DNA of 64,000 nucleotides from IMG/VR virus record IMGVR_UViG_3300037010_003311, positions 1 through 64,000 of that record, one strand, 5' to 3'. Shown in pieces: positions 1 through 63,650 of the stretch (its first letter is position 1; each line of letters opens with the position of its first letter). The position numbers were made by a program, and so were the translations under genes. A model generated the notes under the pieces. The model was not told the DNA's origin and ran no database searches. It saw only the letters and a list, made by a program, of their open reading frames with translations.

Positions 1-24
1 ACATAGAAATTATATTATTGAATA
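1..24. repeat. dyad element A, copy 1 (right half only, cut by window edge)
   Basis: ACATAGAAATTATATTATTGAATA matches the right part of copies 2-4. Confidence 0.75.
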
Positions 25-59
25 AAACAAAAAGGCCAAAAGAGCCAAAAAGGAATAAC

Positions 60-218
60 ATGAAAAATGTCGAAATAAAAAATATTGCGCCAAGAGCGCT
101 AGTTGCCAGAACGCGTTATGCGTTCGAGCGTGCAACAATAGGTACGATTGAGTACAAAAAAGCATTAATTGCTTATGATAGGGCATTGAGAAATGCCGAA
201 AGAAGAAGAAGTGCGTAA
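60..218 (+). CDS. small basic hypothetical protein
   Basis: ATG at 60 after AAGGA; followed by a GNRA-loop hairpin. Confidence 0.55.
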   Translation: MKNVEIKNIAPRALVARTRYAFERATIGTIEYKKALIAYDRALRNAERRRSA

Positions 219-226
219 GCACTTCT
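207..226 (+). terminator. hairpin, probable terminator
   Basis: AGAAGTGC-GTAA-GCACTTCT over the stop codon, T-rich downstream. Confidence 0.6.
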
Positions 227-269
227 ATATTTGTACAGTTATTTATTTTTATTAGAGGATAAAAGGTCG

Positions 270-330
270 TTATTTCTATACTACATTAAATAATTATTAA
301 TAGTTAACATAGAAATAATATTATTGAATA
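270..330. repeat. dyad element A, copy 2
   Basis: TTATTTCTATACTA-N21-TAACATAGAAATAA then TATTATTGAATA. Confidence 0.8.
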
Positions 331-539
331 ACTAGATGGAATGATATATTAGAGGGCATTAGTTAGAGTAAATTAAATTGATAAGATTAAGTATTAACCT
401 ACTTAGTCGAGTAATACCAATTTGAGGAGTAGACGTAAAAGTTTATGAATTAGAACGATATTAAAATCAGTATAACACTTTAACAAAATGTGTTCGAAAT
501 GTTGAAGCCCATTTTAGTTTTTGTTTAAATCTATTCTTT

Positions 540-598
540 ATTTCTATGTTACCGTAAATAAATATTATAGTTTAACATAGAAATTATAATATTGAATA
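540..598. repeat. dyad element A, copy 3
   Basis: perfect 12-bp inverted repeat ATTTCTATGTTA/TAACATAGAAAT, 21-bp spacer, then TATAATATTGAATA. Confidence 0.8.
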
Positions 599-625
599 GG
601 AGATAACAGACCCTATTTGCTACCC

Positions 626-657
626 TGATTGGGCCGACGGGCCCAATCAATTTTGTT
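626..657 (+). terminator. GC-rich hairpin (terminator or leader structure)
   Basis: TGATTGGGCC-GACG-GGCCCAATCA followed by ATTTTGTT. Confidence 0.55.
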
Positions 658-679
658 AATTTTTTTAAAAGGTTATATT

Positions 680-1321
680 ATGGAAAATATTAAAAGTGCT
701 GTAGAAAGCTATTACCAAGCGGAAATTGCGCGGAATGATACCGCTCATAATTTGGATCATATTAGATCGGTTGCGGAAAAAGTTATTGTGATCAGAAAAG
801 ATCTTTATCCAGATAAGCCAGAATTTGATTATCTTTTAATTTTGTGCGCATATTTACATGATTTAAAATGTCAGGTAAGTAGAAAAATGCATAATGAATT
901 AGCATCCGAATATATTCTGACTCATTATAAAACTGACAAATTCTTAAAAGAATTATGTCTAGGAGATGTAAAACGAATAGCGAATGCTGTTTATTTGCAT
1001 AGATCATCTATCGAATTAGATGAAATGAATCCAAAGCATAAGGATCCCTTAGTTTTAATTCTACGGTTGGCCGATAAAAACCGACCAGAACTAAGGGAAA
1101 TGTTAAAGAGATCATTAAAGTTTAATAAGTATAATGCAGAAGGAGTTCTTAATCATTTAAAGGAGAAATTCTCTAGAAATGGTTATGCCTCAAAAGATAA
1201 GCATTATGCCGAATATTATAAAAAGGATCTCGAGCAATTGTGGAATAAAATAGATAAATTAACGTTGCGTAATATGGAGCGTTACAGTAAATATTTTAAA
1301 TCAATTGATTCTAATCTTTAA
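680..1321 (+). CDS. HD-domain phosphohydrolase
   Basis: H..H (AHNLDH), LHD, H and late D (LADK) motifs; ATG at 680 after AAAAGG. Confidence 0.8.
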   Translation: MENIKSAVESYYQAEIARNDTAHNLDHIRSVAEKVIVIRKDLYPDKPEFDYLLILCAYLHDLKCQVSRKMHNELASEYILTHYKTDKFLKELCLGDVKRIANAVYLHRSSIELDEMNPKHKDPLVLILRLADKNRPELREMLKRSLKFNKYNAEGVLNHLKEKFSRNGYASKDKHYAEYYKKDLEQLWNKIDKLTLRNMERYSKYFKSIDSNL

Positions 1322-1354
1322 GAAGTAAGTGGTAGTAGAAGGGAGGATATTAGT

Positions 1355-1418
1355 ATATTATTTCTATACTACCTTAAATAATTATTAATAGTTAGTATAG
1401 AAATAATATTATTGAATA
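1355..1418. repeat. dyad element A, copy 4
   Basis: perfect 17-bp inverted repeat ATATTATTTCTATACTA/TAGTATAGAAATAATAT, 21-bp spacer, then TATTGAATA. Confidence 0.85.
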
Positions 1419-1461
1419 AGGACAAAGAACCTTATTGAAATTAAAAGTACGGGAGTACAAA

Positions 1462-1638
1462 ATGAATGCGAAAAAAATAGAAAAAGAAATATTGCAAATA
1501 AAGTTGACAATATCAAAGATTGAATTGGATAGATTTGAATATATCCAAAAAGTTAAAGAGCTAAGAAACACGAGAGAAAGTCTCAAAAATGATTTGGCTA
1601 TGTTGGAGCTTATGCTCCTAGTAGCGGATGATCTATAA
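1462..1638 (+). CDS. small coiled-coil hypothetical protein
   Basis: ATG after GGGAG; helical, charged sequence. Confidence 0.55.
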   Translation: MNAKKIEKEILQIKLTISKIELDRFEYIQKVKELRNTRESLKNDLAMLELMLLVADDL

Positions 1639-1663
1639 CCAAACGGTTATAGATCATCTTTTG
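1627..1663 (+). terminator. intrinsic terminator
   Basis: 14-bp stem GATGATCTATAACC/GGTTATAGATCATC plus TTTTT. Confidence 0.8.
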
Positions 1664-1773
1664 TGACCGGAATGTCGTAAAACTATAACATATAGTGTAA
1701 CTCATTTATCGCAATGAATGAGTTTCTCACCAATTATAGTAAATAAAAAATAACTCAAAAAGAAGGAAATATT

Positions 1774-2448
1774 ATGACACAATCAAATGAAATTAAAAAC
1801 GAGAACAACACAATTACTCCAAAGTATAAACTTGGAGCAGCAAAAGAGTTTAACGGAAAAACTCTTTTTAGAATTATCGCTCTTAGATCTTTCAGCAATG
1901 TAATTGCTGGAGATATTGGCGGCTGGATTGAAAGCGAAGCCAATTTATCCCATGACGGAAACGCATGGGTATTTGACGAAGCCATGGTATATGGTAATGC
2001 CAAAGTATTTGGCAATGCCGAATTATGGGGTAATGCCGAAGTATTCGGCAATGCTCGCGTATACAACTACGCGCGCATTGCCGATAATGCCATGGTATGG
2101 GACAATACCATGGTATATGATTATGCCTTGGTATTGGATGATGCCAAGGTATATGAAAATTCCCATGTATTTGGGAATGGTGTAGTGAGAGGTGACACCT
2201 CAATATTTGGTGACGCTATAGTCACCAAAGCGGCAGTGTCGCTTCCAACCGACGAACATATGATTGTCATCACTGACAATCATATATCGATTGGGGGGAA
2301 AAATTTCCCAATCGAGAATTGGAACGAAACTGATAAAGAAATAGCCAAAATAAATTTTGGCGCTGACAATTGGTGGAAAAAATGGAAACCAATTGCCTTT
2401 GGGATAATTGAGGCTTATCCCAACGGGGCCTTCGTAAAAAGAGGTTAA
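1774..2448 (+). CDS. capped hexapeptide-repeat (beta-helix) protein, dispersed copy
   Basis: N-cap KYKLG..TLFR..ALR.F..GDIGGWIE..NLSH.G.AW, V[YF][GD]NAx repeats, C-cap ITDN.I.IG...WWK.WKPI. Confidence 0.9.
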   Translation: MTQSNEIKNENNTITPKYKLGAAKEFNGKTLFRIIALRSFSNVIAGDIGGWIESEANLSHDGNAWVFDEAMVYGNAKVFGNAELWGNAEVFGNARVYNYARIADNAMVWDNTMVYDYALVLDDAKVYENSHVFGNGVVRGDTSIFGDAIVTKAAVSLPTDEHMIVITDNHISIGGKNFPIENWNETDKEIAKINFGADNWWKKWKPIAFGIIEAYPNGAFVKRG

Positions 2449-2456
2449 CACTATAA

Positions 2457-2500
2457 CGTTTGATGCACTTAATCATACAATCGATTAAGTGTATTAAACG
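2457..2500 (+). terminator. long RNA hairpin (terminator or processing site)
   Basis: 18-bp stem whose two mismatches are G-U pairs on the + strand transcript. Confidence 0.6.
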
Positions 2501-2547
2501 TGAGGTGTTACCATCGAACTTTTTTTATTAATGAAAGGATATATATA

Positions 2548-2796
2548 ATGTTAAAATTAAAAAAAGGACTGAGTTTTGAGGAATTAGGTTTAGTCATTTC
2601 CTCGATAGAAAGTAGAGGGTCGACACTCGACTTGTTTTATATAGACCCAAAAATAATCAAAAAAATTAAAGTTGACGAAATATGTAGATATCTCGTTATT
2701 ATTAATGACGAAATCGAGATTCGTTTTAGTAGATCCGATTATGAGAAAGTCAATCTCAAACAACTCGAAGATTGGATTGATATTTATTTGATTTAA
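2548..2796 (+). CDS. hypothetical protein
   Basis: ATG after AAAGGA. Confidence 0.6.
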   Translation: MLKLKKGLSFEELGLVISSIESRGSTLDLFYIDPKIIKKIKVDEICRYLVIINDEIEIRFSRSDYEKVNLKQLEDWIDIYLI

Positions 2797-2809
2797 TTGG
2801 AGGATAAAT

Positions 2810-3790
2810 ATGAACATATTAAGGTTTGCCATTTTAGTGGCTATTTCTGCAGCAATTCTTAATGCAACCCCAGACTGGTTCCAAGATCGGTCTTTAATTG
2901 CCGATAAAACTTTTATTGGTTACGGTGAAGATGCTAATCTTCAAAATGCGGTTACCTTAGCTAGAGCTGATATTAGTAATCAGTTACAGACGAAGGTTAA
3001 TAGTAATATTAGCATTACACAAGCTGATCATAATGGTGTAATCAGTAGTGATTCTGTGCAGCAAAATGACTCAACTAGTGCTTCGGTGTTAGAGGAGTCC
3101 CAAATCATTAAGCAATCATACCAAGATGGTAGATGGTTTGTTGCGGTACAGTATCAAGAACTTACCCAAATAAATCGCTTTGTAAAAAAAGTTGAAGCTA
3201 GTAAGGGCTCAGAAAATATAACTGAGCACCAAAATCAATATTTTGTACATACTTATTTAGGTATGGAACTTAATAAGAAACTTGGTAAGATGGATATCGG
3301 TCTCCAGCGTCAAGCTGGCGAATGGTATCTTAATTATAAAGATATCTATCAAAAAATAGATATCAATATTCCAGATCTTTTTATTACGTTTTCTACTACT
3401 GAAGCAAATAGATTAGATATTGAAAAAAGCAGTAGGTTCGAAAGAATCATCAATGATGGCGAACCAGTTCACTTTCACCCAGTATCTAAAAAAAGGTATT
3501 GGAGCCTATTTGCTATGTCACCAGAGGGTGAAGTATATGTTATAGAAGACAACATGCCTATAAACATGAAACCAGGAAATTTTAATTTCAGGAAGAAAAC
3601 TGGGGACACAGAACGTCCAACAATGTTTGTAGCAGTCTTTAGTAATAGTCGTATAGATAACTCATACTTCCGTTTAATGAATGGTTATGAGTCATTAGAT
3701 ACTTACAAAAACGATAAAGTTCGTTTTAATAAATTTATCGAATTTTTAGATGACAAAGAATATGTCACTAAAAAAATGATAATTAAATAA
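2810..3790 (+). CDS. secreted LPP20-like domain protein
   Basis: N-terminal signal peptide; PDWF..FIGYG..A..ARADISNQLQTKV pattern. Confidence 0.6.
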   Translation: MNILRFAILVAISAAILNATPDWFQDRSLIADKTFIGYGEDANLQNAVTLARADISNQLQTKVNSNISITQADHNGVISSDSVQQNDSTSASVLEESQIIKQSYQDGRWFVAVQYQELTQINRFVKKVEASKGSENITEHQNQYFVHTYLGMELNKKLGKMDIGLQRQAGEWYLNYKDIYQKIDINIPDLFITFSTTEANRLDIEKSSRFERIINDGEPVHFHPVSKKRYWSLFAMSPEGEVYVIEDNMPINMKPGNFNFRKKTGDTERPTMFVAVFSNSRIDNSYFRLMNGYESLDTYKNDKVRFNKFIEFLDDKEYVTKKMIIK

Positions 3791-3803
3791 AAAAGGAGAA
3801 ATA

Positions 3804-4565
3804 ATGAAAAAATTGTTAGTTGCGAGTATGAGTGGTGGATTAGATTCAGCCACTTTGGTCCGTAAAGCATTAGGGGAAGGATATATAGTTCTTCCCGTAA
3901 ATTTTCAATATGGTCAAAAAAACTATATTGAATCCGTCGCTCAAAGCAATCTTATCGAATTTTTCGATAAGAAATTTCCAAACCAAATTTTAAAAACGGT
4001 TAGTATAGACACCACCCGTATTATTTCGGACTTTATTGTCCAATACCAAAGTGCTAGAGATAGTGGTTTGGTATTGGAGAAAACCGGGGAGGAGTTCTAT
4101 ACCCCAAGCCGAAATCTTTTATTTATGACCCTATGTGCGGTCATAGGTGAAATTACGGCAATAGGTAGTGGATACGATGAGATCAGTATTGGTCTCGGTA
4201 TTCATAAACATAGTAGTGAAAACTACAAAAAGGACTACTGGGATATAACCCCAGAGTTCGTAAACCGGTTACAAAACCTGCTGGAGTTAAATGATAGTGT
4301 GAAAATCAATATCTATTCTCCATATGTGGAAGAATTCAAATCTGGTATCATTCAAGATGCCGAAGATATGAATCTTCCATTTTCTTTAACTTGGTCATGC
4401 TATGATCCGGTTTTAGAAATCCACGAAGATGGATTTTCTTCGAAAAAAAATATTTTTAAACCATGTAAAGCATGCGAAGCATGTCTCGAAAGAGATTCAC
4501 AAGCCCGTAAAATTGGAATATATGGAATTAATGATTATTTCATAGAAACTAAAATAGCAAACTAA
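3804..4565 (+). CDS. queC: 7-cyano-7-deazaguanine synthase
   Basis: SGGLDS PP-loop, YGQK, P.RN, TWSCY and PCxxCxxC zinc motif. Confidence 0.93.
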   Translation: MKKLLVASMSGGLDSATLVRKALGEGYIVLPVNFQYGQKNYIESVAQSNLIEFFDKKFPNQILKTVSIDTTRIISDFIVQYQSARDSGLVLEKTGEEFYTPSRNLLFMTLCAVIGEITAIGSGYDEISIGLGIHKHSSENYKKDYWDITPEFVNRLQNLLELNDSVKINIYSPYVEEFKSGIIQDAEDMNLPFSLTWSCYDPVLEIHEDGFSSKKNIFKPCKACEACLERDSQARKIGIYGINDYFIETKIAN

Positions 4566-4645
4566 AACGATAGATGGTGTGGTAGTTGTAGGGATATCGT
4601 AATGATATTTCTATACTACTTTTCCTGTCGCAAAAAAGGATATTA

Positions 4646-4954
4646 ATGATAAAATTATCGTACATAAATGCCCCAGAAACTAGTGTGGGTGATATTATGA
4701 TAAAAGGGTTTGGTTCTAAAAAATATAAATTTAGTGTTTGTTTACATAATGGTATCAATCATGACCAAAGGATTAAGATAATACATGATTCTAACCCTAT
4801 ATCTTATAATCCAGGGAATGAGTATATACTATTGATTAAGACGCACCTTTTTTCGGTATGGCGTTATCCAAATGGATATGATTATTTATTTATAATAGAT
4901 CATCATCAAGTTATAGTTGATCCATTTATACCTAAGTGGTGTTATTTGGATTAA
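4646..4954 (+). CDS. hypothetical protein
   Basis: ORF with AAGGA RBS. Confidence 0.55.
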   Translation: MIKLSYINAPETSVGDIMIKGFGSKKYKFSVCLHNGINHDQRIKIIHDSNPISYNPGNEYILLIKTHLFSVWRYPNGYDYLFIIDHHQVIVDPFIPKWCYLD

Positions 4955-4989
4955 ACCTAATGCCCAAAGTGGTTCTAATAAGGAAAAAA

Positions 4990-5544
4990 ATGAAAGAGGA
5001 AACATTAAATCTAACAAGCGTTAAAAACGACTTGCAAAAAATTAAAGATAGTAATAGTAAAATAATCTATCTTTATAACGCGATAAGCTTTATGTTTAAT
5101 TTACTAAAAGAGAAAAATCTTTTAATTAAATATTGGCGAGAGCGAGCAGAAGCCCTTGGGGATAATATCCTAGTCGAAAAAGATGCGGAAATTATTAAAC
5201 TGAAGGAGCAGTTACAGAAATCCAAATGTAATCTGGAGCAGGCCAAGGCCACAGAAAAATTGTTGCTTGAGAAGCTAGCATCTTCACTCAAACAAGTCGA
5301 AGAAACATTCAAAGTTCTTAAACAAGAGCGACAGTTGAATAAATTAGGTGATATGACGGAAGCTTGGAAAAATCAAGTAAAAGTTTTAGTTGATAATGAA
5401 TTAACTATAACTACCACTAACACTACTACAATATCTTCTAGTATTCCAATCCGAGAAATTAAAGATGAAGACCGTCCAAGTTCTCGGATATTATATAAAC
5501 AGCATACTAGTTATAATAAATATGGTAATGGTTTTAGATATTAA
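4990..5544 (+). CDS. coiled-coil hypothetical protein
   Basis: ATG after AAGGA; heptad-rich. Confidence 0.6.
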   Translation: MKEETLNLTSVKNDLQKIKDSNSKIIYLYNAISFMFNLLKEKNLLIKYWRERAEALGDNILVEKDAEIIKLKEQLQKSKCNLEQAKATEKLLLEKLASSLKQVEETFKVLKQERQLNKLGDMTEAWKNQVKVLVDNELTITTTNTTTISSSIPIREIKDEDRPSSRILYKQHTSYNKYGNGFRY

Positions 5545-5584
5545 CTGGCGCATAGTAGTCGAATTTCAAATTAAAGGACTAACA

Positions 5585-6190
5585 ATGAAAATCATTACAA
5601 AATTTTTACTAACCTTTATGTTGTTGGTAAGTACCGCAATTACATTAAATGGAGCAGTGGCTCCGGCTGCCGGAGCCACTGAGGTAATTATTAATATTAG
5701 AGATGGTGACGTTTCAATAAACGGTGGTAACGTTATTTATAAAAAATCAACAACTACTAATTTACTGGACGTATTATTATCGCATACAAATGCTGGTGAT
5801 TCAAAACCAAACGATAATAATAATAATCAATCTATGATTGACAATATTATTATAGGGAAAAGTACTTATAAATTTATAGGTACTCCAGTTATCACTTTAA
5901 CTGGTACGGGAACTGGTGCAAAGTTTTATGGAAAATTAAATAATGATAGAACATTAAATTCCATTTTAACAGTTTCTCCTGGTTCTGGTTATACTCCGGG
6001 TAATGTTGTATCTATTACTGATAGCGCAACTGGAAAAGTAGTACCTATAACCACAGGTGTAGTTTTAGATAGACAAGTTAAGTTTGGAGATGGGGGTGGT
6101 AAGTTTTGGGATGGGGGTGGTTCATACTTCTCAAGTTTAGTTGTGGCGATTATGATAGTAATGTTAGCATTTGTATTCCTCTCATTGTAA
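5585..6190 (+). CDS. exported, C-terminally membrane-anchored protein
   Basis: signal peptide, Gly/Thr-rich core, hydrophobic C-terminus. Confidence 0.65.
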   Translation: MKIITKFLLTFMLLVSTAITLNGAVAPAAGATEVIINIRDGDVSINGGNVIYKKSTTTNLLDVLLSHTNAGDSKPNDNNNNQSMIDNIIIGKSTYKFIGTPVITLTGTGTGAKFYGKLNNDRTLNSILTVSPGSGYTPGNVVSITDSATGKVVPITTGVVLDRQVKFGDGGGKFWDGGGSYFSSLVVAIMIVMLAFVFLSL

Positions 6191-6292
6191 AAGTTGGTAA
6201 CCAGTCATTAAGTGTTGAGGTGAGATTTGTAACAGCTACCGGCAATGGTTTTAGATATTAGTCGAACTCAAATAATTTTTAAAGGATAATAA

Positions 6293-6550
6293 ATGTTAAT
6301 AGAAAAACAATCAGACCTACTTGCTGAGAGTGTAGCGAATTGTATGGTTGATCCACAAAAGGCGCTGGAAGATGCTTTCGGTGATGAGTACTGTGAATTG
6401 GCTCAAGCCATAGTGGAACCAAAAGGTATAGACGATGAGTACTATACCTTTATGGAAGTTGATCCCTATAACTGGATGGGGTTTGTATTAACCGTAATAG
6501 GGAGTAAGTACAAAGATTTTGTACAACATATTATCGATAATGGTTATTAA
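6293..6550 (+). CDS. acidic hypothetical protein
   Basis: RBS plus ORF. Confidence 0.6.
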   Translation: MLIEKQSDLLAESVANCMVDPQKALEDAFGDEYCELAQAIVEPKGIDDEYYTFMEVDPYNWMGFVLTVIGSKYKDFVQHIIDNGY

Positions 6551-6634
6551 ATAATAATTAAATACCAATCCAAATTAAATCTATTTGGAAAAGGTTAGAT
6601 TAGTAACTTATAATAACTTAATTCGAATAAGGAG

Positions 6635-7393
6635 GTGATGAAAGAAAAACTAAATACCAAACCAAAACTACAAAGGAGAAATATGACACAAAGTTCCCGG
6701 AGCCATTTTGTGAGCACTAGGAAAGCTTGCGAAACGGAAAACTTATTTAAAACATTTAGTTCTGGCATAAGAAAATATTTCTATATTTTCTTAATTTTCG
6801 TGGTAATGATTATTGGGGTATTCGAATATACGGAATCCGAATTTGAACATAGTACGAGATTTAACGTTTATGAGAAAAAGATACAACAATTGCAACAGCA
6901 AGTCATAGAAGCTGAAAAAGCTAAAGTGGCTGAACAGCAACAAGTTGCCAAGTTAAAGAAAATTGTTGCCCTTCAAGATCAAAAACGCACGCAGATTAAT
7001 AGTATTATTAAGGACTTAGATCGGTGTAAACATCCGAAGATAGCATTGGGTATTGGGTTTAGCGAATCGCACTTAAGATACGATGTTAAACATCCAACAA
7101 CCGATACACATGGAATAGGTGGTATTAAAGATGGGTACTGGAGTAAACAGCTTCGTGCCCATAATATACCACTGAATAGTCTGCAGGCAATAGACTATGT
7201 TTTTAATGCTTCATTAAAACTGAAAGGTAATAATTATGAAGCATTAAAGTTCTATAAAGGTTCAAAAGATAATGATTATAGTTATCGTTTGACTAAAACC
7301 TATATAGAAAAGGTTGAGCATTCGCCAAACTTTAAAAAGTTAATTGCTATCAATCAATTGCAAACCAACCTTAAGCGCGAGGTTGGTATTTAA
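6635..7393 (+). CDS. membrane-anchored coiled-coil protein with lysozyme/transglycosylase-like domain
   Basis: TM helix, coiled coil, IALGIGFSES catalytic-Glu-like motif, GIGGI, YKG. Confidence 0.55.
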   Translation: MMKEKLNTKPKLQRRNMTQSSRSHFVSTRKACETENLFKTFSSGIRKYFYIFLIFVVMIIGVFEYTESEFEHSTRFNVYEKKIQQLQQQVIEAEKAKVAEQQQVAKLKKIVALQDQKRTQINSIIKDLDRCKHPKIALGIGFSESHLRYDVKHPTTDTHGIGGIKDGYWSKQLRAHNIPLNSLQAIDYVFNASLKLKGNNYEALKFYKGSKDNDYSYRLTKTYIEKVEHSPNFKKLIAINQLQTNLKREVGI

Positions 7394-12105: not shown

Positions 12106-13633
12106 AGAAATAATCGAAATAATCACTAACGTTAGTAACTGCTCGAAAAGTAGTGAGAAAAAGAAAATATTAGAGGAAATAGATCTTAATACCGATTTAG
12201 GGAAAAAGTTTATAACATATATGAATTATGTTTATAACGAAGCGGATTATGTTTACAATATTAAAAATTTATTGAGTCTTTTTGATCAGGACGATATAAT
12301 TAATGAAAAACATGGTACCTTTGATATAGGAGATCTTTTTTTATTACTTGAGCAACTTAATGCTGGATCTGGGGGAAAAGATGAAAAACAATTAATTCGT
12401 GACTTTATAGACAATTCCAGTTTCGACTTATATCAGTTACTTGAGTACGCAATTGATCGCACTATTCGAGCTGGGATTGATGTTAAAGGATTAGTAAATG
12501 CTATCCCAGAACTGAGCTATTTAATTACTCCATATATGAGATGCGAGAAAGAAGAGAAGCTGGATACTAGAATTACGTATCCAGCGATTGCTCAGGTTAA
12601 GGCTGATGGTCTATTTATAAATATGATCTGTGATGAAGATATAAAATTTGTAACTCGTTATGGTAATAAGGTTGATTTTGATGGCCCCTTAAAAGTTGCT
12701 TTAAAAAACCTTTTAAGTGAAATAGTTGGTGAAAAAAGTACGGATATTAGTACCCAAGTTATAATGGGTGAGCTACTAGTACTTGATCAAAATGGTGAAC
12801 CACTACCTCGCGAGGTAGGTAATGGTTTACTAAATTCATTATTTAAACGTGTAGCAACTGAGAGAGGTCTGGAAGCAAAACTTATTAAAGCTAAAACACC
12901 AAAAGCTAAAAAGAAGTTAATGGAAGAACAGGCCTTAAATATTAGCGAATGGGAAAATACGAGAAAGAATATTGTAGCAAAAGTTTGGGACATAGTTCCT
13001 TATGAAGATTATAAGAAACTTTCATGTAGTATTCCATATAGTGATAGACTAGAAACTCTCAAAACTTTACTAGCTAATGTCCCATCGCCTAGTATAAACA
13101 TCATCGATACTAAAATAGTGAACTCAAAAAATGATATTTACAATTACTACGGTGAAGTGCTAGACAAAGGAGAAGAGGGATTAGTTGTTAAAAATTTTAA
13201 TATTACTTGGAAGCATGGTACTAGCACCGAGGGTATGATTAAAATGAAAGAATTCTTTGACTGTGATCTTAAGATCACTGGTTGGGTACCAGGTGAAGAT
13301 AGTTATACTGGTGGTATTGGAGCACTAATATGTGAAAGTTCCGATGGAATAATAAAGGTTGACCCTAGTTCTGGATTAAGTATGGCTCAACGTGGACTAC
13401 AAAGAGTCGACGAAGAGGACTCAAGTAAAGGTTGGGAACCGATCCCATGCTTCGATTTAAATCAATACACAGGTTTAATAGCAGCAATAAAGTTTAATAC
13501 TCTTATGGTTGAAAAGGAAGATGGTACTAGATCTCTATTTTTACCAAAAATTGTAGAGATTCGGGATCCATCGGATAAACGCGAGGCGGATAGTATAGAA
13601 GATATATTATCAGAAATTAAATCAAAAAAATAG
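12098..13633 (+). CDS. ATP-dependent DNA ligase (T4 gp30-like)
   Basis: KADG adenylation motif, MGEL, EGLVVK, C-terminal SLFLP..VEIR..DK. Confidence 0.92.
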   Translation: MPKEIIEIITNVSNCSKSSEKKKILEEIDLNTDLGKKFITYMNYVYNEADYVYNIKNLLSLFDQDDIINEKHGTFDIGDLFLLLEQLNAGSGGKDEKQLIRDFIDNSSFDLYQLLEYAIDRTIRAGIDVKGLVNAIPELSYLITPYMRCEKEEKLDTRITYPAIAQVKADGLFINMICDEDIKFVTRYGNKVDFDGPLKVALKNLLSEIVGEKSTDISTQVIMGELLVLDQNGEPLPREVGNGLLNSLFKRVATERGLEAKLIKAKTPKAKKKLMEEQALNISEWENTRKNIVAKVWDIVPYEDYKKLSCSIPYSDRLETLKTLLANVPSPSINIIDTKIVNSKNDIYNYYGEVLDKGEEGLVVKNFNITWKHGTSTEGMIKMKEFFDCDLKITGWVPGEDSYTGGIGALICESSDGIIKVDPSSGLSMAQRGLQRVDEEDSSKGWEPIPCFDLNQYTGLIAAIKFNTLMVEKEDGTRSLFLPKIVEIRDPSDKREADSIEDILSEIKSKK

Positions 13634-13687
13634 AAATAATAGTTATTTTTATTTCTATTTAAATTAAATAAAGGATAAAGGATAAAG

Positions 13688-35991: not shown

Positions 35992-37584
35992 ATGGTAGGA
36001 AAAAAATATAAACTTGGAGAATCAAAAAAGTCCCAAGGAAGAACTCTTTTTAGAGTTGTAGCGTTAAGAGATTTCGGTGACGTAAAAGCAGGTGATATCG
36101 GTGGTTGGATAGAAACTGAAACTAACTTATCTCATAGTGGTGATTCTTGGGTCTATGATGAGGCCAGAGTTAGTGGTGATACTTGGGTCTATGGTAATGC
36201 CAAAATATCCAATAATGCACAGATATTCGGTAATGCCTGCATATATGGTAATACCAAAGTAGGGGATGAAGCTCAGGTATTTGGTAATGCCATCGTATAT
36301 GGTAATGCTTTGATATATGGTTCTACTCAGGTATTTGGTAATGTTGAAATATATGAGAATGCCCAAGTATTTGGTATGGCTAAAGCATACGATAATGTTC
36401 GTATATTTGGTTATGCATGGATTACCGGTAATACTCAAGTATATGGTAACACCATAGTTACCAAAGCGGTTAATACAATATACACTGGTGAGTATGATAT
36501 TATCATTACTGACAACTATATAAAGATTTGGTGGGAAAATCACCCAATCGACGTTTGGGAAGCATTTACCGACGAGCAGATAGCTGACATGGATACCGGA
36601 GCGCTAGCGTGGTGGAAAGTTTGGAAGCCAATTATATTTGATATAATACAAAAAGGAAATAATATGACATCACAAAAAGAAATTAAAAACTTCTGGGAAA
36701 AGATGCTTAATTACCGTATAAATAAAAATAACTCCAAAAAAGAAGGAAATAATATGATGCAATCAAATGAAATTAAAAACGAGAATAAAGCAATTGTACC
36801 AAAATATAAACTTGGTGAAGCAAAAACCTTTAATGTAAGAACTCTTTTTAGAGTTGAAGCTCTGAGATCATTTGGCAATGTGTCTACCGGTGATATCGGT
36901 GGCTGGATTGAAAACGAAGATAATTTGTCTCATAGTGGAGATGCTTGGGTCTATGACGAAGCTATGGTATATGGTAATGCTCGAGTGAGTAATGACGCAA
37001 TAGTGAGGGATAATGCCTGCATATATGGTAATACCAAAGTAGGGGATGAAGCTCAGGTATTTGGTAATGCCATCGTATATGGTAATGCTTGTATAAGTGA
37101 TAATGCTCAGGTATATGGTAATGCTCGTATAAGTGATGACGCCCAAGTATACGATACAGCTCATGTATTCGATAACGCATATATAATCGATAATGCTTGG
37201 ATAGGTAATAATGCAAGAGTATGTGGCAATGCGCGTATAACTGATGATTCGCGAGTATACGATAACGCATTGATTAGTGGTCATTCCTTGATTTCTGATA
37301 GGGCTTTGATATATGGCAATGCCCAGGTATTTGATAATGGCTTGGTTAAGGGTAATACCCATGTATGGGGTAACGCCGAAGTTACCAAAGCAGTTATTAC
37401 GATACATACCGATGCTTACAATATTACCATTACTGATAATTATATAACTATTGGGTTCGAAAATCACCCAATCGCTGATTGGGAAACATTTACTGATGAT
37501 GAAATATCCAAAATGGATGCAGGAGCGTTAGATTGGTGGCGAGTCTGGAAGCCAATTATATTTGCTATAATAAATGCTTATTAA
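35992..37584 (+). CDS. in-frame fusion of two capped hexapeptide-repeat genes
   Basis: two complete N-cap/repeat/C-cap units; former intergenic DNA with its RBS is read through; internal start near 36754. Confidence 0.85.
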   Translation: MVGKKYKLGESKKSQGRTLFRVVALRDFGDVKAGDIGGWIETETNLSHSGDSWVYDEARVSGDTWVYGNAKISNNAQIFGNACIYGNTKVGDEAQVFGNAIVYGNALIYGSTQVFGNVEIYENAQVFGMAKAYDNVRIFGYAWITGNTQVYGNTIVTKAVNTIYTGEYDIIITDNYIKIWWENHPIDVWEAFTDEQIADMDTGALAWWKVWKPIIFDIIQKGNNMTSQKEIKNFWEKMLNYRINKNNSKKEGNNMMQSNEIKNENKAIVPKYKLGEAKTFNVRTLFRVEALRSFGNVSTGDIGGWIENEDNLSHSGDAWVYDEAMVYGNARVSNDAIVRDNACIYGNTKVGDEAQVFGNAIVYGNACISDNAQVYGNARISDDAQVYDTAHVFDNAYIIDNAWIGNNARVCGNARITDDSRVYDNALISGHSLISDRALIYGNAQVFDNGLVKGNTHVWGNAEVTKAVITIHTDAYNITITDNYITIGFENHPIADWETFTDDEISKMDAGALDWWRVWKPIIFAIINAY

Positions 37585-61615: not shown

Positions 61616-61662
61616 AAAACTTACCGGATAACCCGGTAAGTTTTCCTGTCGCTAAAAAAGGA
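61616..61662 (+). repeat. hairpin element B, copy 1 (probable terminator plus CCTGTCGC box)
   Basis: AAAACTTACCGG-ATAAC-CCGGTAAGTTTT then CCTGTCGCTAAAAAAGGA. Confidence 0.8.
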
Positions 61663-63630: not shown

Positions 63631-63650
63631 GCTCTCCTGTCGCGAAAAAG
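63607..63650 (+). repeat. hairpin element B, copy 3
   Basis: AGAGCTTACCGG-GATAT-CCGGTAAGCTCT then CCTGTCGCGAAAAAG. Confidence 0.8.

What the first reader, a model, noticed from the sequence alone, without database searches (positions are those of the whole stretch)
1..1418. Four copies of a 60-bp dyad element with a fixed 21-bp spacer and compensatory changes
Seen: TTTCTATnnTA-N21-TAnnATAGAAA followed by TATTGAATA. Copy 3 has GT/AC and copy 4 has AC/GT at the paired variable positions. Copy 2 combines the copy-4 left arm with the copy-3 right arm, like a recombinant. Each copy precedes a short gene or a non-coding stretch, and several of these units end in hairpins. Inference: phage-specific early promoters or operators (possibly cruciform-forming), origin iterons, or recombination sites bounding single-gene cassettes.
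Basis: partly seen in the sequence, partly recalled or inferred. Interest (0 to 1): 0.62.

Follow-up and report, generated by a model that had tools for sequence, protein, structure and literature searches.

The report
Palindromic early-promoter cassettes of a jumbo phage
The repeated 60-bp dyads are most likely promoter cassettes of an uncultivated giant phage that carries its own RNA polymerase: each is two inverted copies of the phage's standard promoter core in front of a short early gene, and the copies also act as recombination hot spots.

Summary
The window is the left end of a 226,657-bp jumbo-phage contig. The contig breaks inside copy 1; copies 2-4 are complete, and a diverged fifth copy lies at genome position 90,185.

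The arm core ATAGAAAT is not private to the dyads. It is a genome-wide, strand-oriented intergenic motif (T-A-W-T-ATAGAAAT-A) lying 19-114 nt before about 16 replication and nucleotide-metabolism genes. I read it as the phage's early/middle promoter core.

Support for compensatory change is weak (p about 0.05).

A dyad is therefore two inverted promoter cores. The rightward core is followed by a fixed 6-nt gap and a conserved ATTGAA. This layout resembles the "AT-rich box, 6 nt, conserved start" of virion-RNA-polymerase promoters in AR9 and phiKZ.

Dyads persist at a syntenic site in relatives with 72-73% RNA polymerase beta identity. They occur in clusters before small ORFs, or between divergent genes, in relatives at 46-49%.

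Near-identical sister strains concentrate 15 of 18 differences in the 88 bp around copy 2, and assemblies break at the copies. The elements therefore also behave as recombination junctions.

No transcription data could be obtained. The iteron reading is not supported.

The parts
1..24 (+). Copy 1, cut by the contig start. It holds the end of the right arm (ACATAGAAA, 1-9) and the tail TTATATTATTGAATA (10-24).
   Evidence: Sister assemblies also break at the copies.
60..218 (+). Short ORF of 52 aa (66 aa from the TTG at 18) driven by copy 1. It has no family match.
207..226 (.). GC-rich hairpin at the end of ORF 1. It is terminator-like on both strands.
270..330 (+). Copy 2: left arm 273-283, 21-nt spacer 284-304, right arm 305-315 (TAACATAGAAA), tail 316-330.
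   Evidence: This copy is polymorphic in sister strains.
331..540 (+). Non-coding 210-nt stretch between copies 2 and 3. It holds no credible ORF and has no Rfam match. Fold z-score is -2.6.
538..598 (+). Copy 3: left arm 541-551 (GT), spacer 552-572, right arm 573-583 (AC), tail 584-598.
626..660 (+). Strong hairpin plus T-run in the leader, about 27 nt after copy 3 and before the HD gene. It is terminator- or attenuator-like.
   Evidence: z -3.8
680..1321 (+). HD-domain protein gene (213 aa) downstream of copy 3.
1355..1418 (+). Copy 4: 17-bp perfect arms 1355-1371 and 1393-1409 (core arms 1361-1371 AC and 1393-1403 GT), spacer 1372-1392, tail 1404-1418.
1462..1638 (+). Short ORF (58 aa) driven by copy 4.
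1627..1658 (+). Perfect 14-bp hairpin followed by TTTT. It is the terminator of the copy-4 unit.
   Evidence: I20
4607..4631 (+). Isolated left arm ATTTCTATACTAC, identical to the left arms of copies 2 and 4. It is fused to the second intergenic motif, TTTTCCTGTCGC, 23 nt before the ATG at 4646.

Best explanation
Each dyad is a compound promoter cassette of a jumbo phage that encodes its own multisubunit RNA polymerase.

The right arm, GTTA-nn-ATAGAAAT, is a copy of the phage's standard AT-rich promoter core and points into the downstream gene. It is followed by a fixed 6-nt A/T gap and a conserved ATTGAA, which probably holds the transcription start. The left arm is a second copy of the same core in inverted orientation. 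It may act as a divergent promoter or as a symmetric recognition element.

The cassettes head short early-gene units that end in hairpin terminators. In two cases they head a leader that itself carries a terminator.

Because the cassettes are about 60-77 bp long and near-identical, they also serve as substrates for homologous recombination and gene conversion. This shuffles the small-gene units, much as PeSL elements do in T4-like phages.

Shown: the anatomy, the genome-wide distribution of the core, its conservation in relatives, and the strain-level breakpoints.

Inferred: promoter activity, which polymerase uses it, the start site, and the role of the left arm.
For: 1. The phage encodes RNA polymerase beta' and beta genes at 77-86 kb. 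Complete relatives have two beta genes.

2. ATAGAAAT lies outside ORFs in 30 of 49 occurrences. Composition-matched permutations average 8%.

3. Sixteen single sites are co-oriented with genes and lie 19-114 nt before start codons. Their consensus is T-4 A-3 W-2 T-1 ATAGAAAT A+8. They precede the clamp loader, dNMP kinase, a DNA polymerase piece, the RNase H-like gene and others.

4. The dyad 'TA' and 'nn' positions match the conserved -4/-3 and the low-information -2/-1 positions of that motif.

5. Synteny. The copy-5 site keeps the dyad and ATAGAAAT-W6-ATTGAA in two relatives, although the rest of the spacer region has diverged. The site between the RecJ-like and RNase H-like genes is a dyad in relative A but a single core in this genome.

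6. Relatives at 46-49% RNA polymerase beta identity:
   - G001 has four identical 28-bp perfect palindromes, TTTCTATCTTTATCGATAAAGATAGAAA, within about 0.7 kb. Their right-hand cores lie 26-35 nt before the ATGs of small ORFs (52 nt for the first), too close for anything but a core promoter. A fifth TTTCTAT-ATAGAAA match nearby lies inside a coding sequence.
   - G002 packs at least six arms into a 300-bp region between divergent genes. One leftward arm lies 55 nt before the leftward ORF.

7. The layout 'conserved AT-rich box, 6 nt, conserved start' matches the early promoters of AR9 and of phiKZ-type phages (PMC5312081, PMC7598289).

8. Recombination. Of the 18 differences between a sister strain and the window, 15 fall in window 254-341; in a second strain all 14 do. 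Copy 2 of those strains carries the copy-4-type GT arm. Independent assemblies break at 342 and 1416. An orphan left arm is fused to another promoter-like motif at 4607.
Against: There are no transcription data.

Only one RNA polymerase set is present in the 226 kb. Which polymerase reads these sites is therefore unknown.

The left arm has no leftward gene to serve in this genome.

The tail ATTGAA is absent from single sites and from the more distant relatives.

Only five dyads are seen, fewer than the 30-40 early promoters known in AR9. About 19% of the genome is missing, however.

Perfect palindromes in G001 and the 17-bp arms of copy 4 suggest that symmetry itself is selected. The simple 'two promoters' picture does not explain this.
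Confidence: 0.6

Rival explanations
1. The dyad is an operator. A dimeric phage regulator, either a shut-off repressor or an activator of early genes, binds the two inverted half-sites. The promoter is the overlapping tail region. This could coexist with the promoter reading.
For: The dyad symmetry is strict, with arms of 11-17 bp. The spacer is fixed at 21 bp in copies 2-4, giving 32 bp (three helical turns) centre to centre. G001 has perfect 28-bp palindromes. Copies 2 and 4 contain a weak sigma-70-like TTAATA-16-TATTAT.
Against: The TTTCTAT-to-ATAGAAA gap ranges from 14 to 35 nt in relatives, so helical phasing is not kept. The half-site occurs singly before about 16 genes. The sigma-70-like match is absent from copy 3, and such matches are not above chance in the region: 30 found against 35 expected. 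No candidate regulator was identified.
Confidence: 0.15
2. The dyad works as a nucleic-acid hairpin. Either a DNA cruciform or hairpin is recognised by the phage polymerase (as with N4), or an RNA stem-loop in read-through transcripts terminates, insulates or stabilises the units.
For: The dyads fold better than shuffles: z -2.0 to -5.1 as DNA and -2.0 to -4.3 as RNA. Several complementary nn variants exist: GT/AC, AC/GT, GG/CC, AT/AT and CT/AG. The spacers of copy 5 and of G003 are themselves palindromic, and G001 is a perfect palindrome.
Against: Covariation is only marginal (p about 0.05 and 0.11), and half of the dyads are mismatched at nn. The stems are A/T-rich with 21-nt loops in this genome. 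No U-tract follows them. Separate GC-rich terminators already end the units.
Confidence: 0.12
3. The copies are origin iterons, or purely recombination or packaging sites without promoter function.
For: The cluster sits at the contig end, where cumulative GC skew is lowest. The rightward gene block starts here, and the leftward block runs to the contig's other end. In G002 the arms cluster with other short repeats in a divergent intergenic region. Strain breakpoints lie at the copies.
Against: The copies are 268-820 bp apart with genes and terminators between them. One lies 90 kb away inside a co-directional block, and it is syntenic in relatives. No initiator gene is adjacent. GC skew simply follows gene orientation. 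The core is shared with about 16 gene-proximal single sites.
Confidence: 0.06

Closest known systems
Early (virion RNA polymerase) promoters of jumbo phages that encode RNA polymerases (AR9: AAATATATATTAT-6N-G+1; phiKZ, phiR1-37)
   Same: The phage encodes a multisubunit RNA polymerase. A short, highly conserved AT-rich box can be found by motif over-representation upstream of early operons. A conserved position lies 6 nt downstream of the box (PMC5312081, PMC7598289).
   Different: The sequence is different. Here the box is duplicated in inverted orientation to give a 43-47-bp dyad, which has not been described for AR9 or phiKZ. No start site has been mapped. The same core also precedes replication genes as a single site. 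The second polymerase is not in the assembled 226 kb.
PeSL (promoter-early stem-loop) cassettes of T4-like phages (Arbiol 2010, PMC2839356; Comeau 2014, PMC4122927)
   Same: These are small, repeated, composite promoter-plus-inverted-repeat cassettes between small non-essential ORFs. They are clustered in a plastic region and act as points of homologous exchange between close relatives.
   Different: PeSLs have sigma-70-type -35/-10 boxes and a separate GC-containing terminator stem-loop just upstream. Here no conserved sigma-70 promoter is present, and the inverted repeat is made of the promoter core itself.
Hairpin promoters of the phage N4 virion RNA polymerase (from my own knowledge, not read here)
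   Same: These are early promoters clustered at one genome end whose recognition involves an inverted repeat.
   Different: The N4 hairpins have 5-7-bp stems and 3-nt loops and are read by a single-subunit polymerase. Here the arms are 11-17 bp and the spacers 10-31 bp, and the polymerase genes found are multisubunit.
Clustered strong early promoters at the leading end of phage genomes (T7 A1-A3; from my own knowledge)
   Same: Several near-identical promoters are stacked within about 1.4 kb at the start of a co-directional gene block.
   Different: The T7 promoters are host sigma-70 promoters without dyad symmetry. Whether this contig end is a physical genome end is unknown.

Membership tests
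Jumbo-phage virion-RNA-polymerase early promoter | The phage encodes multisubunit RNA polymerase(s). | tested here: met
   Beta' (NSDYDGD at 78,914) and beta (83,931-85,907) are present. Complete relatives carry two beta genes. Only one set is in this contig.
Jumbo-phage virion-RNA-polymerase early promoter | A highly conserved AT-rich box of about 10-13 nt is over-represented upstream of early operons. | tested here: met
   TAWTATAGAAATA lies outside ORFs in 30 of 49 cases, against 8% for controls. It is oriented with genes and precedes replication and nucleotide-metabolism genes.
Jumbo-phage virion-RNA-polymerase early promoter | A conserved transcription start lies about 6 nt downstream of the box, and transcription is independent of the host polymerase and of protein synthesis. 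| not testable with these tools
   The sequence fits (ATAGAAAT-W6-ATTGAA in five copies and two relatives). No RNA data could be obtained.
PeSL cassette | A sigma-70-like -35/-10 early promoter. | tested here: not met
   Only a 9-of-12 match exists in copies 2 and 4 and none in copy 3. Sigma-70-like hits in 1-7000 number 30, against 35 expected.
PeSL cassette | A stem-loop immediately upstream of the promoter that terminates the upstream unit. | tested here: inconclusive
   An inverted repeat is present, but it includes the promoter core, is A/T-rich and has no U-tract. Separate GC-rich terminators exist.
PeSL cassette | Located between small ORFs in a plastic region, with exchange points between close relatives. 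| tested here: met
   Differences between sister strains are confined to 254-341: 15 of 18 in one strain and 14 of 14 in another. Assemblies break at the copies. A dyad in one genome corresponds to a single core at the syntenic site in another.
N4-type hairpin promoter | A short hairpin (5-7-bp stem, 3-nt loop) read by a single-subunit virion polymerase. | tested here: not met
   Arms are 11-17 bp and spacers 10-31 bp, corresponding to a 14-35 nt gap between TTTCTAT and ATAGAAA. There is no PF00940 hit, although the control genomes did not ring for that family either.
Replication-origin iterons | Closely spaced direct repeats next to an initiator gene and an unwinding element. | tested here: not met
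   The copies are 268-820 bp apart and separated by genes and terminators. One lies 90 kb away.

The most novel reading that the evidence does not exclude
The symmetry is functional. The promoter-specificity apparatus of this clade's multisubunit virion RNA polymerase recognises an extruded hairpin or cruciform, or a symmetric pair of cores. This would be an N4-like structured-DNA promoter mechanism that arose independently in a cellular-type polymerase. The palindromes would also generate short antisense RNAs that gate the neighbouring early cassettes.
Probability: 0.12. Interest if true: 0.7.

Novelty: new variant of a known kind. Interest (0 to 1): 0.45.

Why it matters
Promoters of jumbo-phage RNA polymerases are known for only a few cultured phages. 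Here a whole uncultivated clade shows a readable regulatory code. RNA polymerase beta in this clade is only 22-24% identical to that of AR9 and PBS1.

That code has three parts:
- an ATAGAAAT core used singly before replication genes;
- the same core paired as palindromes before small early cassettes;
- a second hairpin-TTCCTGTCG motif before tail-fibre and homing-endonuclease genes.

If the code is confirmed, temporal classes could be predicted in metagenomic jumbo phages. Compact, orthogonal promoter parts would become available. It would also extend the idea that promoter cassettes drive modular gene shuffling beyond T4-like phages. On the practical side, these repeats explain why assemblies of this phage break here.

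Tried and rejected
- Megablast of window 1-6000 against GenBank phages found nothing.
- Single-protein searches of IMG/VR with the HD protein and topoisomerase II found no relatives.
- Exact-pattern scans of IMG/VR and the JGI metagenomes returned only chance or unrelated matches. The patterns were the tail 22-mer, the arm pair with a variable gap, and the arm plus tail. The matches were coding sequence or other repeat families. Relatives were reached only through RNA polymerase beta.
- Rfam found no credible family in 1-3000, and there are no tRNAs in the window.
- Walking left of the window with the first small ORF failed, because its product is not on record.
- Walking past the contig's right end found only more copies of a tandem paralog family and no dyad.
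- I considered that the spacer is inverted between the G002 and G004 dyads. I dropped this because the flanks are not homologous, so orientation cannot be fixed.
- I considered a MITE-like mobile element. I rejected it because the unit is asymmetric (it has a conserved tail) and its arms are the generic promoter core.
- I considered that 7-deazaguanine modification marks the single G of the core. There is no TGT/DpdA homologue in the 226 kb, so I did not pursue this.
- No T7-like polymerase or sigma-70 region-2 hit was found. The control genomes for the former did not ring, so that absence is uninformative.

Full report
**Observation**

The window is the first 64 kb of a linear IMG/VR virus contig of 226,657 bp that CheckV rates 81% complete. 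The contig has about 31% G+C. Its genes run rightward from 1 to 97.7 kb and leftward from 98.5 kb to the end.

The pattern TTTCTATnnTA-N21-TAnnATAGAAA occurs at 273-315, 541-583 and 1361-1403. The expectation is 0.04. The right half plus tail, ATAGAAATnATAnTATTGAATA, occurs four times: at 3-24, 309-330, 577-598 and 1397-1418. Copy 1 is cut by the contig start.

The rest of the genome has no further close copy. It does have one diverged copy at 90,185-90,245, with a 24-nt spacer and the tail TAATTATATTGAAAT.

Copy 2 differs from copy 4 at 3 of 58 positions. The repeat unit extends to 77 nt.

The units are:
- copy 1, a 52-aa ORF, then hairpin 207-226;
- copy 2, then 210 nt without a credible ORF;
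- copy 3, hairpin 626-649 plus a T-run, then an HD-domain gene;
- copy 4, a 58-aa ORF, then hairpin 1627-1658.

**What the phage is**

The phage encodes rIIA, split topoisomerase II, an ATP-dependent ligase, NrdA, a clamp loader, QueC-like proteins and a terminase.

It also encodes a multisubunit RNA polymerase. The beta' catalytic motif NSDYDGD is at 78,914, and beta lies at 83,931-85,907. Beta is only 22-24% identical to that of AR9 or PBS1.

Complete relatives (281 kb and 272 kb) carry two beta genes, whereas this contig has one. The second polymerase, presumably the virion one, is therefore probably in the missing part. No sigma-70 region 2 was found.

**The key finding: the arm is a generic promoter-like core**

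An 8-mer enrichment analysis of intergenic DNA gave two outstanding motifs: ATAGAAAT and TTCCTGTCG.

ATAGAAAT lies outside ORFs in 30 of 49 occurrences. For 150 composition-matched permutations the mean is 8%.

Besides the dyads, 16 single sites are co-oriented with the next gene and lie 19-114 nt, mostly 33-60 nt, before its start. Their consensus is T(-4) A(-3) A/T(-2) T(-1) ATAGAAAT A(+8), and an ACTAT-like box often lies 9-15 nt upstream.

These single sites precede the clamp loader, a dNMP kinase, a DNA polymerase piece, the RNase H-like gene, an epimerase, a radical-SAM protein and the terminase.

The second motif is a variable hairpin followed by TTTCCTGTCGY and often AAAAACAAATA, present at 16 sites. 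It precedes tail-fibre genes and two HNH homing-endonuclease genes. The two motifs therefore look like early/middle and late classes.

The 'nn' positions are its low-information -2/-1 positions. A dyad is thus two inverted copies of the generic core. The rightward copy has a dyad-specific extension: a fixed 6-nt A/T gap followed by ATTGAA.

This layout matches the published description of jumbo-phage virion-polymerase promoters, which have a conserved AT-rich box with a conserved start 6 nt downstream, for example AAATATATATTAT-(6N)-G+1 in AR9 (PMC5312081, PMC7598289).

**Relatives**

RNA polymerase beta has many metagenomic homologues.

Relative A is 72% identical (Logan SRR18331992_206) and relative B 73% (GCA_043956535.1). 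Both keep the dyad and ATAGAAAT-W6-ATTGAA at the site syntenic with copy 5. The upstream gene there is 64-66% identical, the downstream gene 42-45%, and the next QueC-like gene 46-53%. The remaining spacer DNA has diverged.

The site between the RecJ-like and RNase H-like genes is a dyad in relative A but a single core in this genome. The left arm is therefore an optional addition to a promoter-like site.

The single site after rIIA and the hairpin-TCCTGTCG motif are also conserved.

IMG/VR relatives at 46-49% identity still use the core:
- G001 has four identical 28-bp perfect palindromes, TTTCTATCTTTATCGATAAAGATAGAAA, within about 0.7 kb. The right-hand core lies 26-35 nt before the ATGs of small ORFs (52 nt for the first). 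This leaves room only for a core promoter and a Shine-Dalgarno sequence. A fifth TTTCTAT-ATAGAAA match nearby lies inside a coding sequence.
- G002 has at least six arms in a 300-bp region between divergent genes. One leftward arm lies 55 nt before the leftward ORF, so a 'left arm' can serve a gene.
- G003 and G004 have dyads with a 29-nt gap between TTTCTAT and ATAGAAA.

Reversed-pattern controls gave 0-1 hits per record. More distant relatives (41-45%) lack the motif.

**Is the symmetry structural?**

The dyads fold better than shuffles: z -1.8 to -5.1 as DNA, and -2.0 and -4.3 as RNA. Several complementary nn pairs exist across genomes.

Across 16 distinct dyads, however, within-dyad symmetry exceeds shuffled pairings only marginally. 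For nn, p is about 0.05. For the six inner positions, p is about 0.11. The outer flanks show no excess. The gap between the TTTCTAT and ATAGAAA cores ranges from 14 to 35 nt.

The evidence therefore does not establish a hairpin or cruciform mechanism, or a rigid dimer operator. The perfect palindromes of G001 and the 17-bp arms of copy 4 keep both readings open.

**Recombination**

Contigs from sister samples that carry the identical HD protein all break at the copies. Two start about 20 nt before copy 2. Logan contigs run from exactly 342 to 1416, and from 486 to 1416.

In the 5.9-kb sister contig, 15 of 18 differences from the window fall within 254-341. In the 1.9-kb contig all 14 do.

In those strains copy 2 has a GT right arm like copy 4, a spacer 2 nt longer and a diverged left flank. 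It is best explained by exchange or conversion between copies.

An orphan left arm, identical to the left arms of copies 2 and 4, is fused to the TTTTCCTGTCGC motif at 4607-4631.

**Comparison with PeSLs and other readings**

These features match the behaviour of PeSL cassettes in T4-like phages (PMC2839356, PMC4122927). The defining sigma-70 promoter is not present, however. Copies 2 and 4 give only a 9-of-12 match and copy 3 none. Such matches number 30 in the region against 35 expected by chance.

The iteron reading fails on spacing and context. Cumulative GC skew is lowest at the contig start and highest at 96 kb, but it simply follows gene orientation.

**Limits**

No transcript data were obtainable. 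Promoter activity, the start site, the polymerase involved and the function of the left arm are therefore inferences. What lies left of copy 1 is unknown. The contig's right end is a tandem paralog family without dyads.

**Verdict**

The promoter interpretation and the recombination-site interpretation are supported. The iteron interpretation is not. The compensatory-change argument is weak.

The element is a new, palindromic variant of phage early-promoter cassettes in an uncultivated clade of jumbo phages that encode their own RNA polymerase.

Noticed in passing
genome-wide, e.g. window 4620-4631, 61641-61652, 63632-63643; G000 110052, 121952, 136767, 162064, 189579, 201946, 225041 (minus strand): A second conserved intergenic cassette: a variable GC-containing hairpin followed directly by TTTCCTGTCG(C/T) and often AAAAACAAATA. 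There are 16 copies, 15 of them outside ORFs. They precede tail-fibre genes and homing-endonuclease genes and are conserved in relatives. This is probably a late-promoter/terminator cassette and is closer in build to a PeSL than the dyads are.
   Followed up: partly
G000 120,498-121,952 and 135,095-136,767: Two HNH homing-endonuclease genes (467 and 521 aa) are each flanked on both sides by near-identical copies of the hairpin-TCCTGTCG cassette, as if the cassette had been duplicated on insertion.
   Followed up: partly
G000 132,600-134,900: The terminase large-subunit gene (132,735-134,660, minus strand) is flanked by inverted repeats of about 75 nt. Each holds a hairpin and an ATAGAAAT core, one pointing into the gene and one pointing away.
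   Followed up: no
window 599-680; G000 90,246-90,357; L155:6790-6926; L027:14060-14197: The dyad promoters of copy 3 and copy 5, and the orthologues of copy 5, are followed by a leader with a strong hairpin plus T-run before the first gene. This suggests attenuation or read-through control. The two relatives also share a tiny ORF in the leader (MEGISTNPPKW / MEGITITPPAWD).
   Followed up: partly
window 331-540: A 210-nt stretch without a credible ORF lies between the rightward core of copy 2 and the leftward core of copy 3. Fold z-score is -2.6 and there is no Rfam match. It could be a small RNA or a decayed cassette.
   Followed up: partly
G000 224,800-226,657 and L188: The contig's right end is a tandem family of at least five paralogous genes of about 160 aa that share their 5' parts (88-100% identical over 130-170 nt). 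A sister-sample contig shows a different arrangement. This is a second repeat-induced assembly break.
   Followed up: partly
G000 210,134 (+) and 210,432 (-); 98,347 (-): Dyad-type arms (AAAAGTTAGTATAGAAATA) occur as a convergent pair 300 bp apart in a 440-bp spacer. A single one lies at the convergence point of the two gene blocks and is followed 20 nt later by a hairpin.
   Followed up: no
window 3804-4565 and G000 90,835-92,271: There are two QueC-like genes, of 253 aa and 478 aa. Relatives also carry PTPS. No TGT/DpdA homologue was found in the 226 kb, so whether the DNA carries 7-deazaguanine is open.
   Followed up: partly
window 1774-2448: A gene built of 18-nt periodic repeats encodes a YdcK-type beta-solenoid or hexapeptide-like protein. 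A larger paralogue lies at 35,992-37,584.
   Followed up: no
window 13,627-13,665: At the end of the ligase gene, two ATAGAAAT cores face each other (AAATAGAAATAA-N9-TTATTTCTATTT). This is the opposite arrangement to the dyads and forms a 12-bp hairpin.
   Followed up: no
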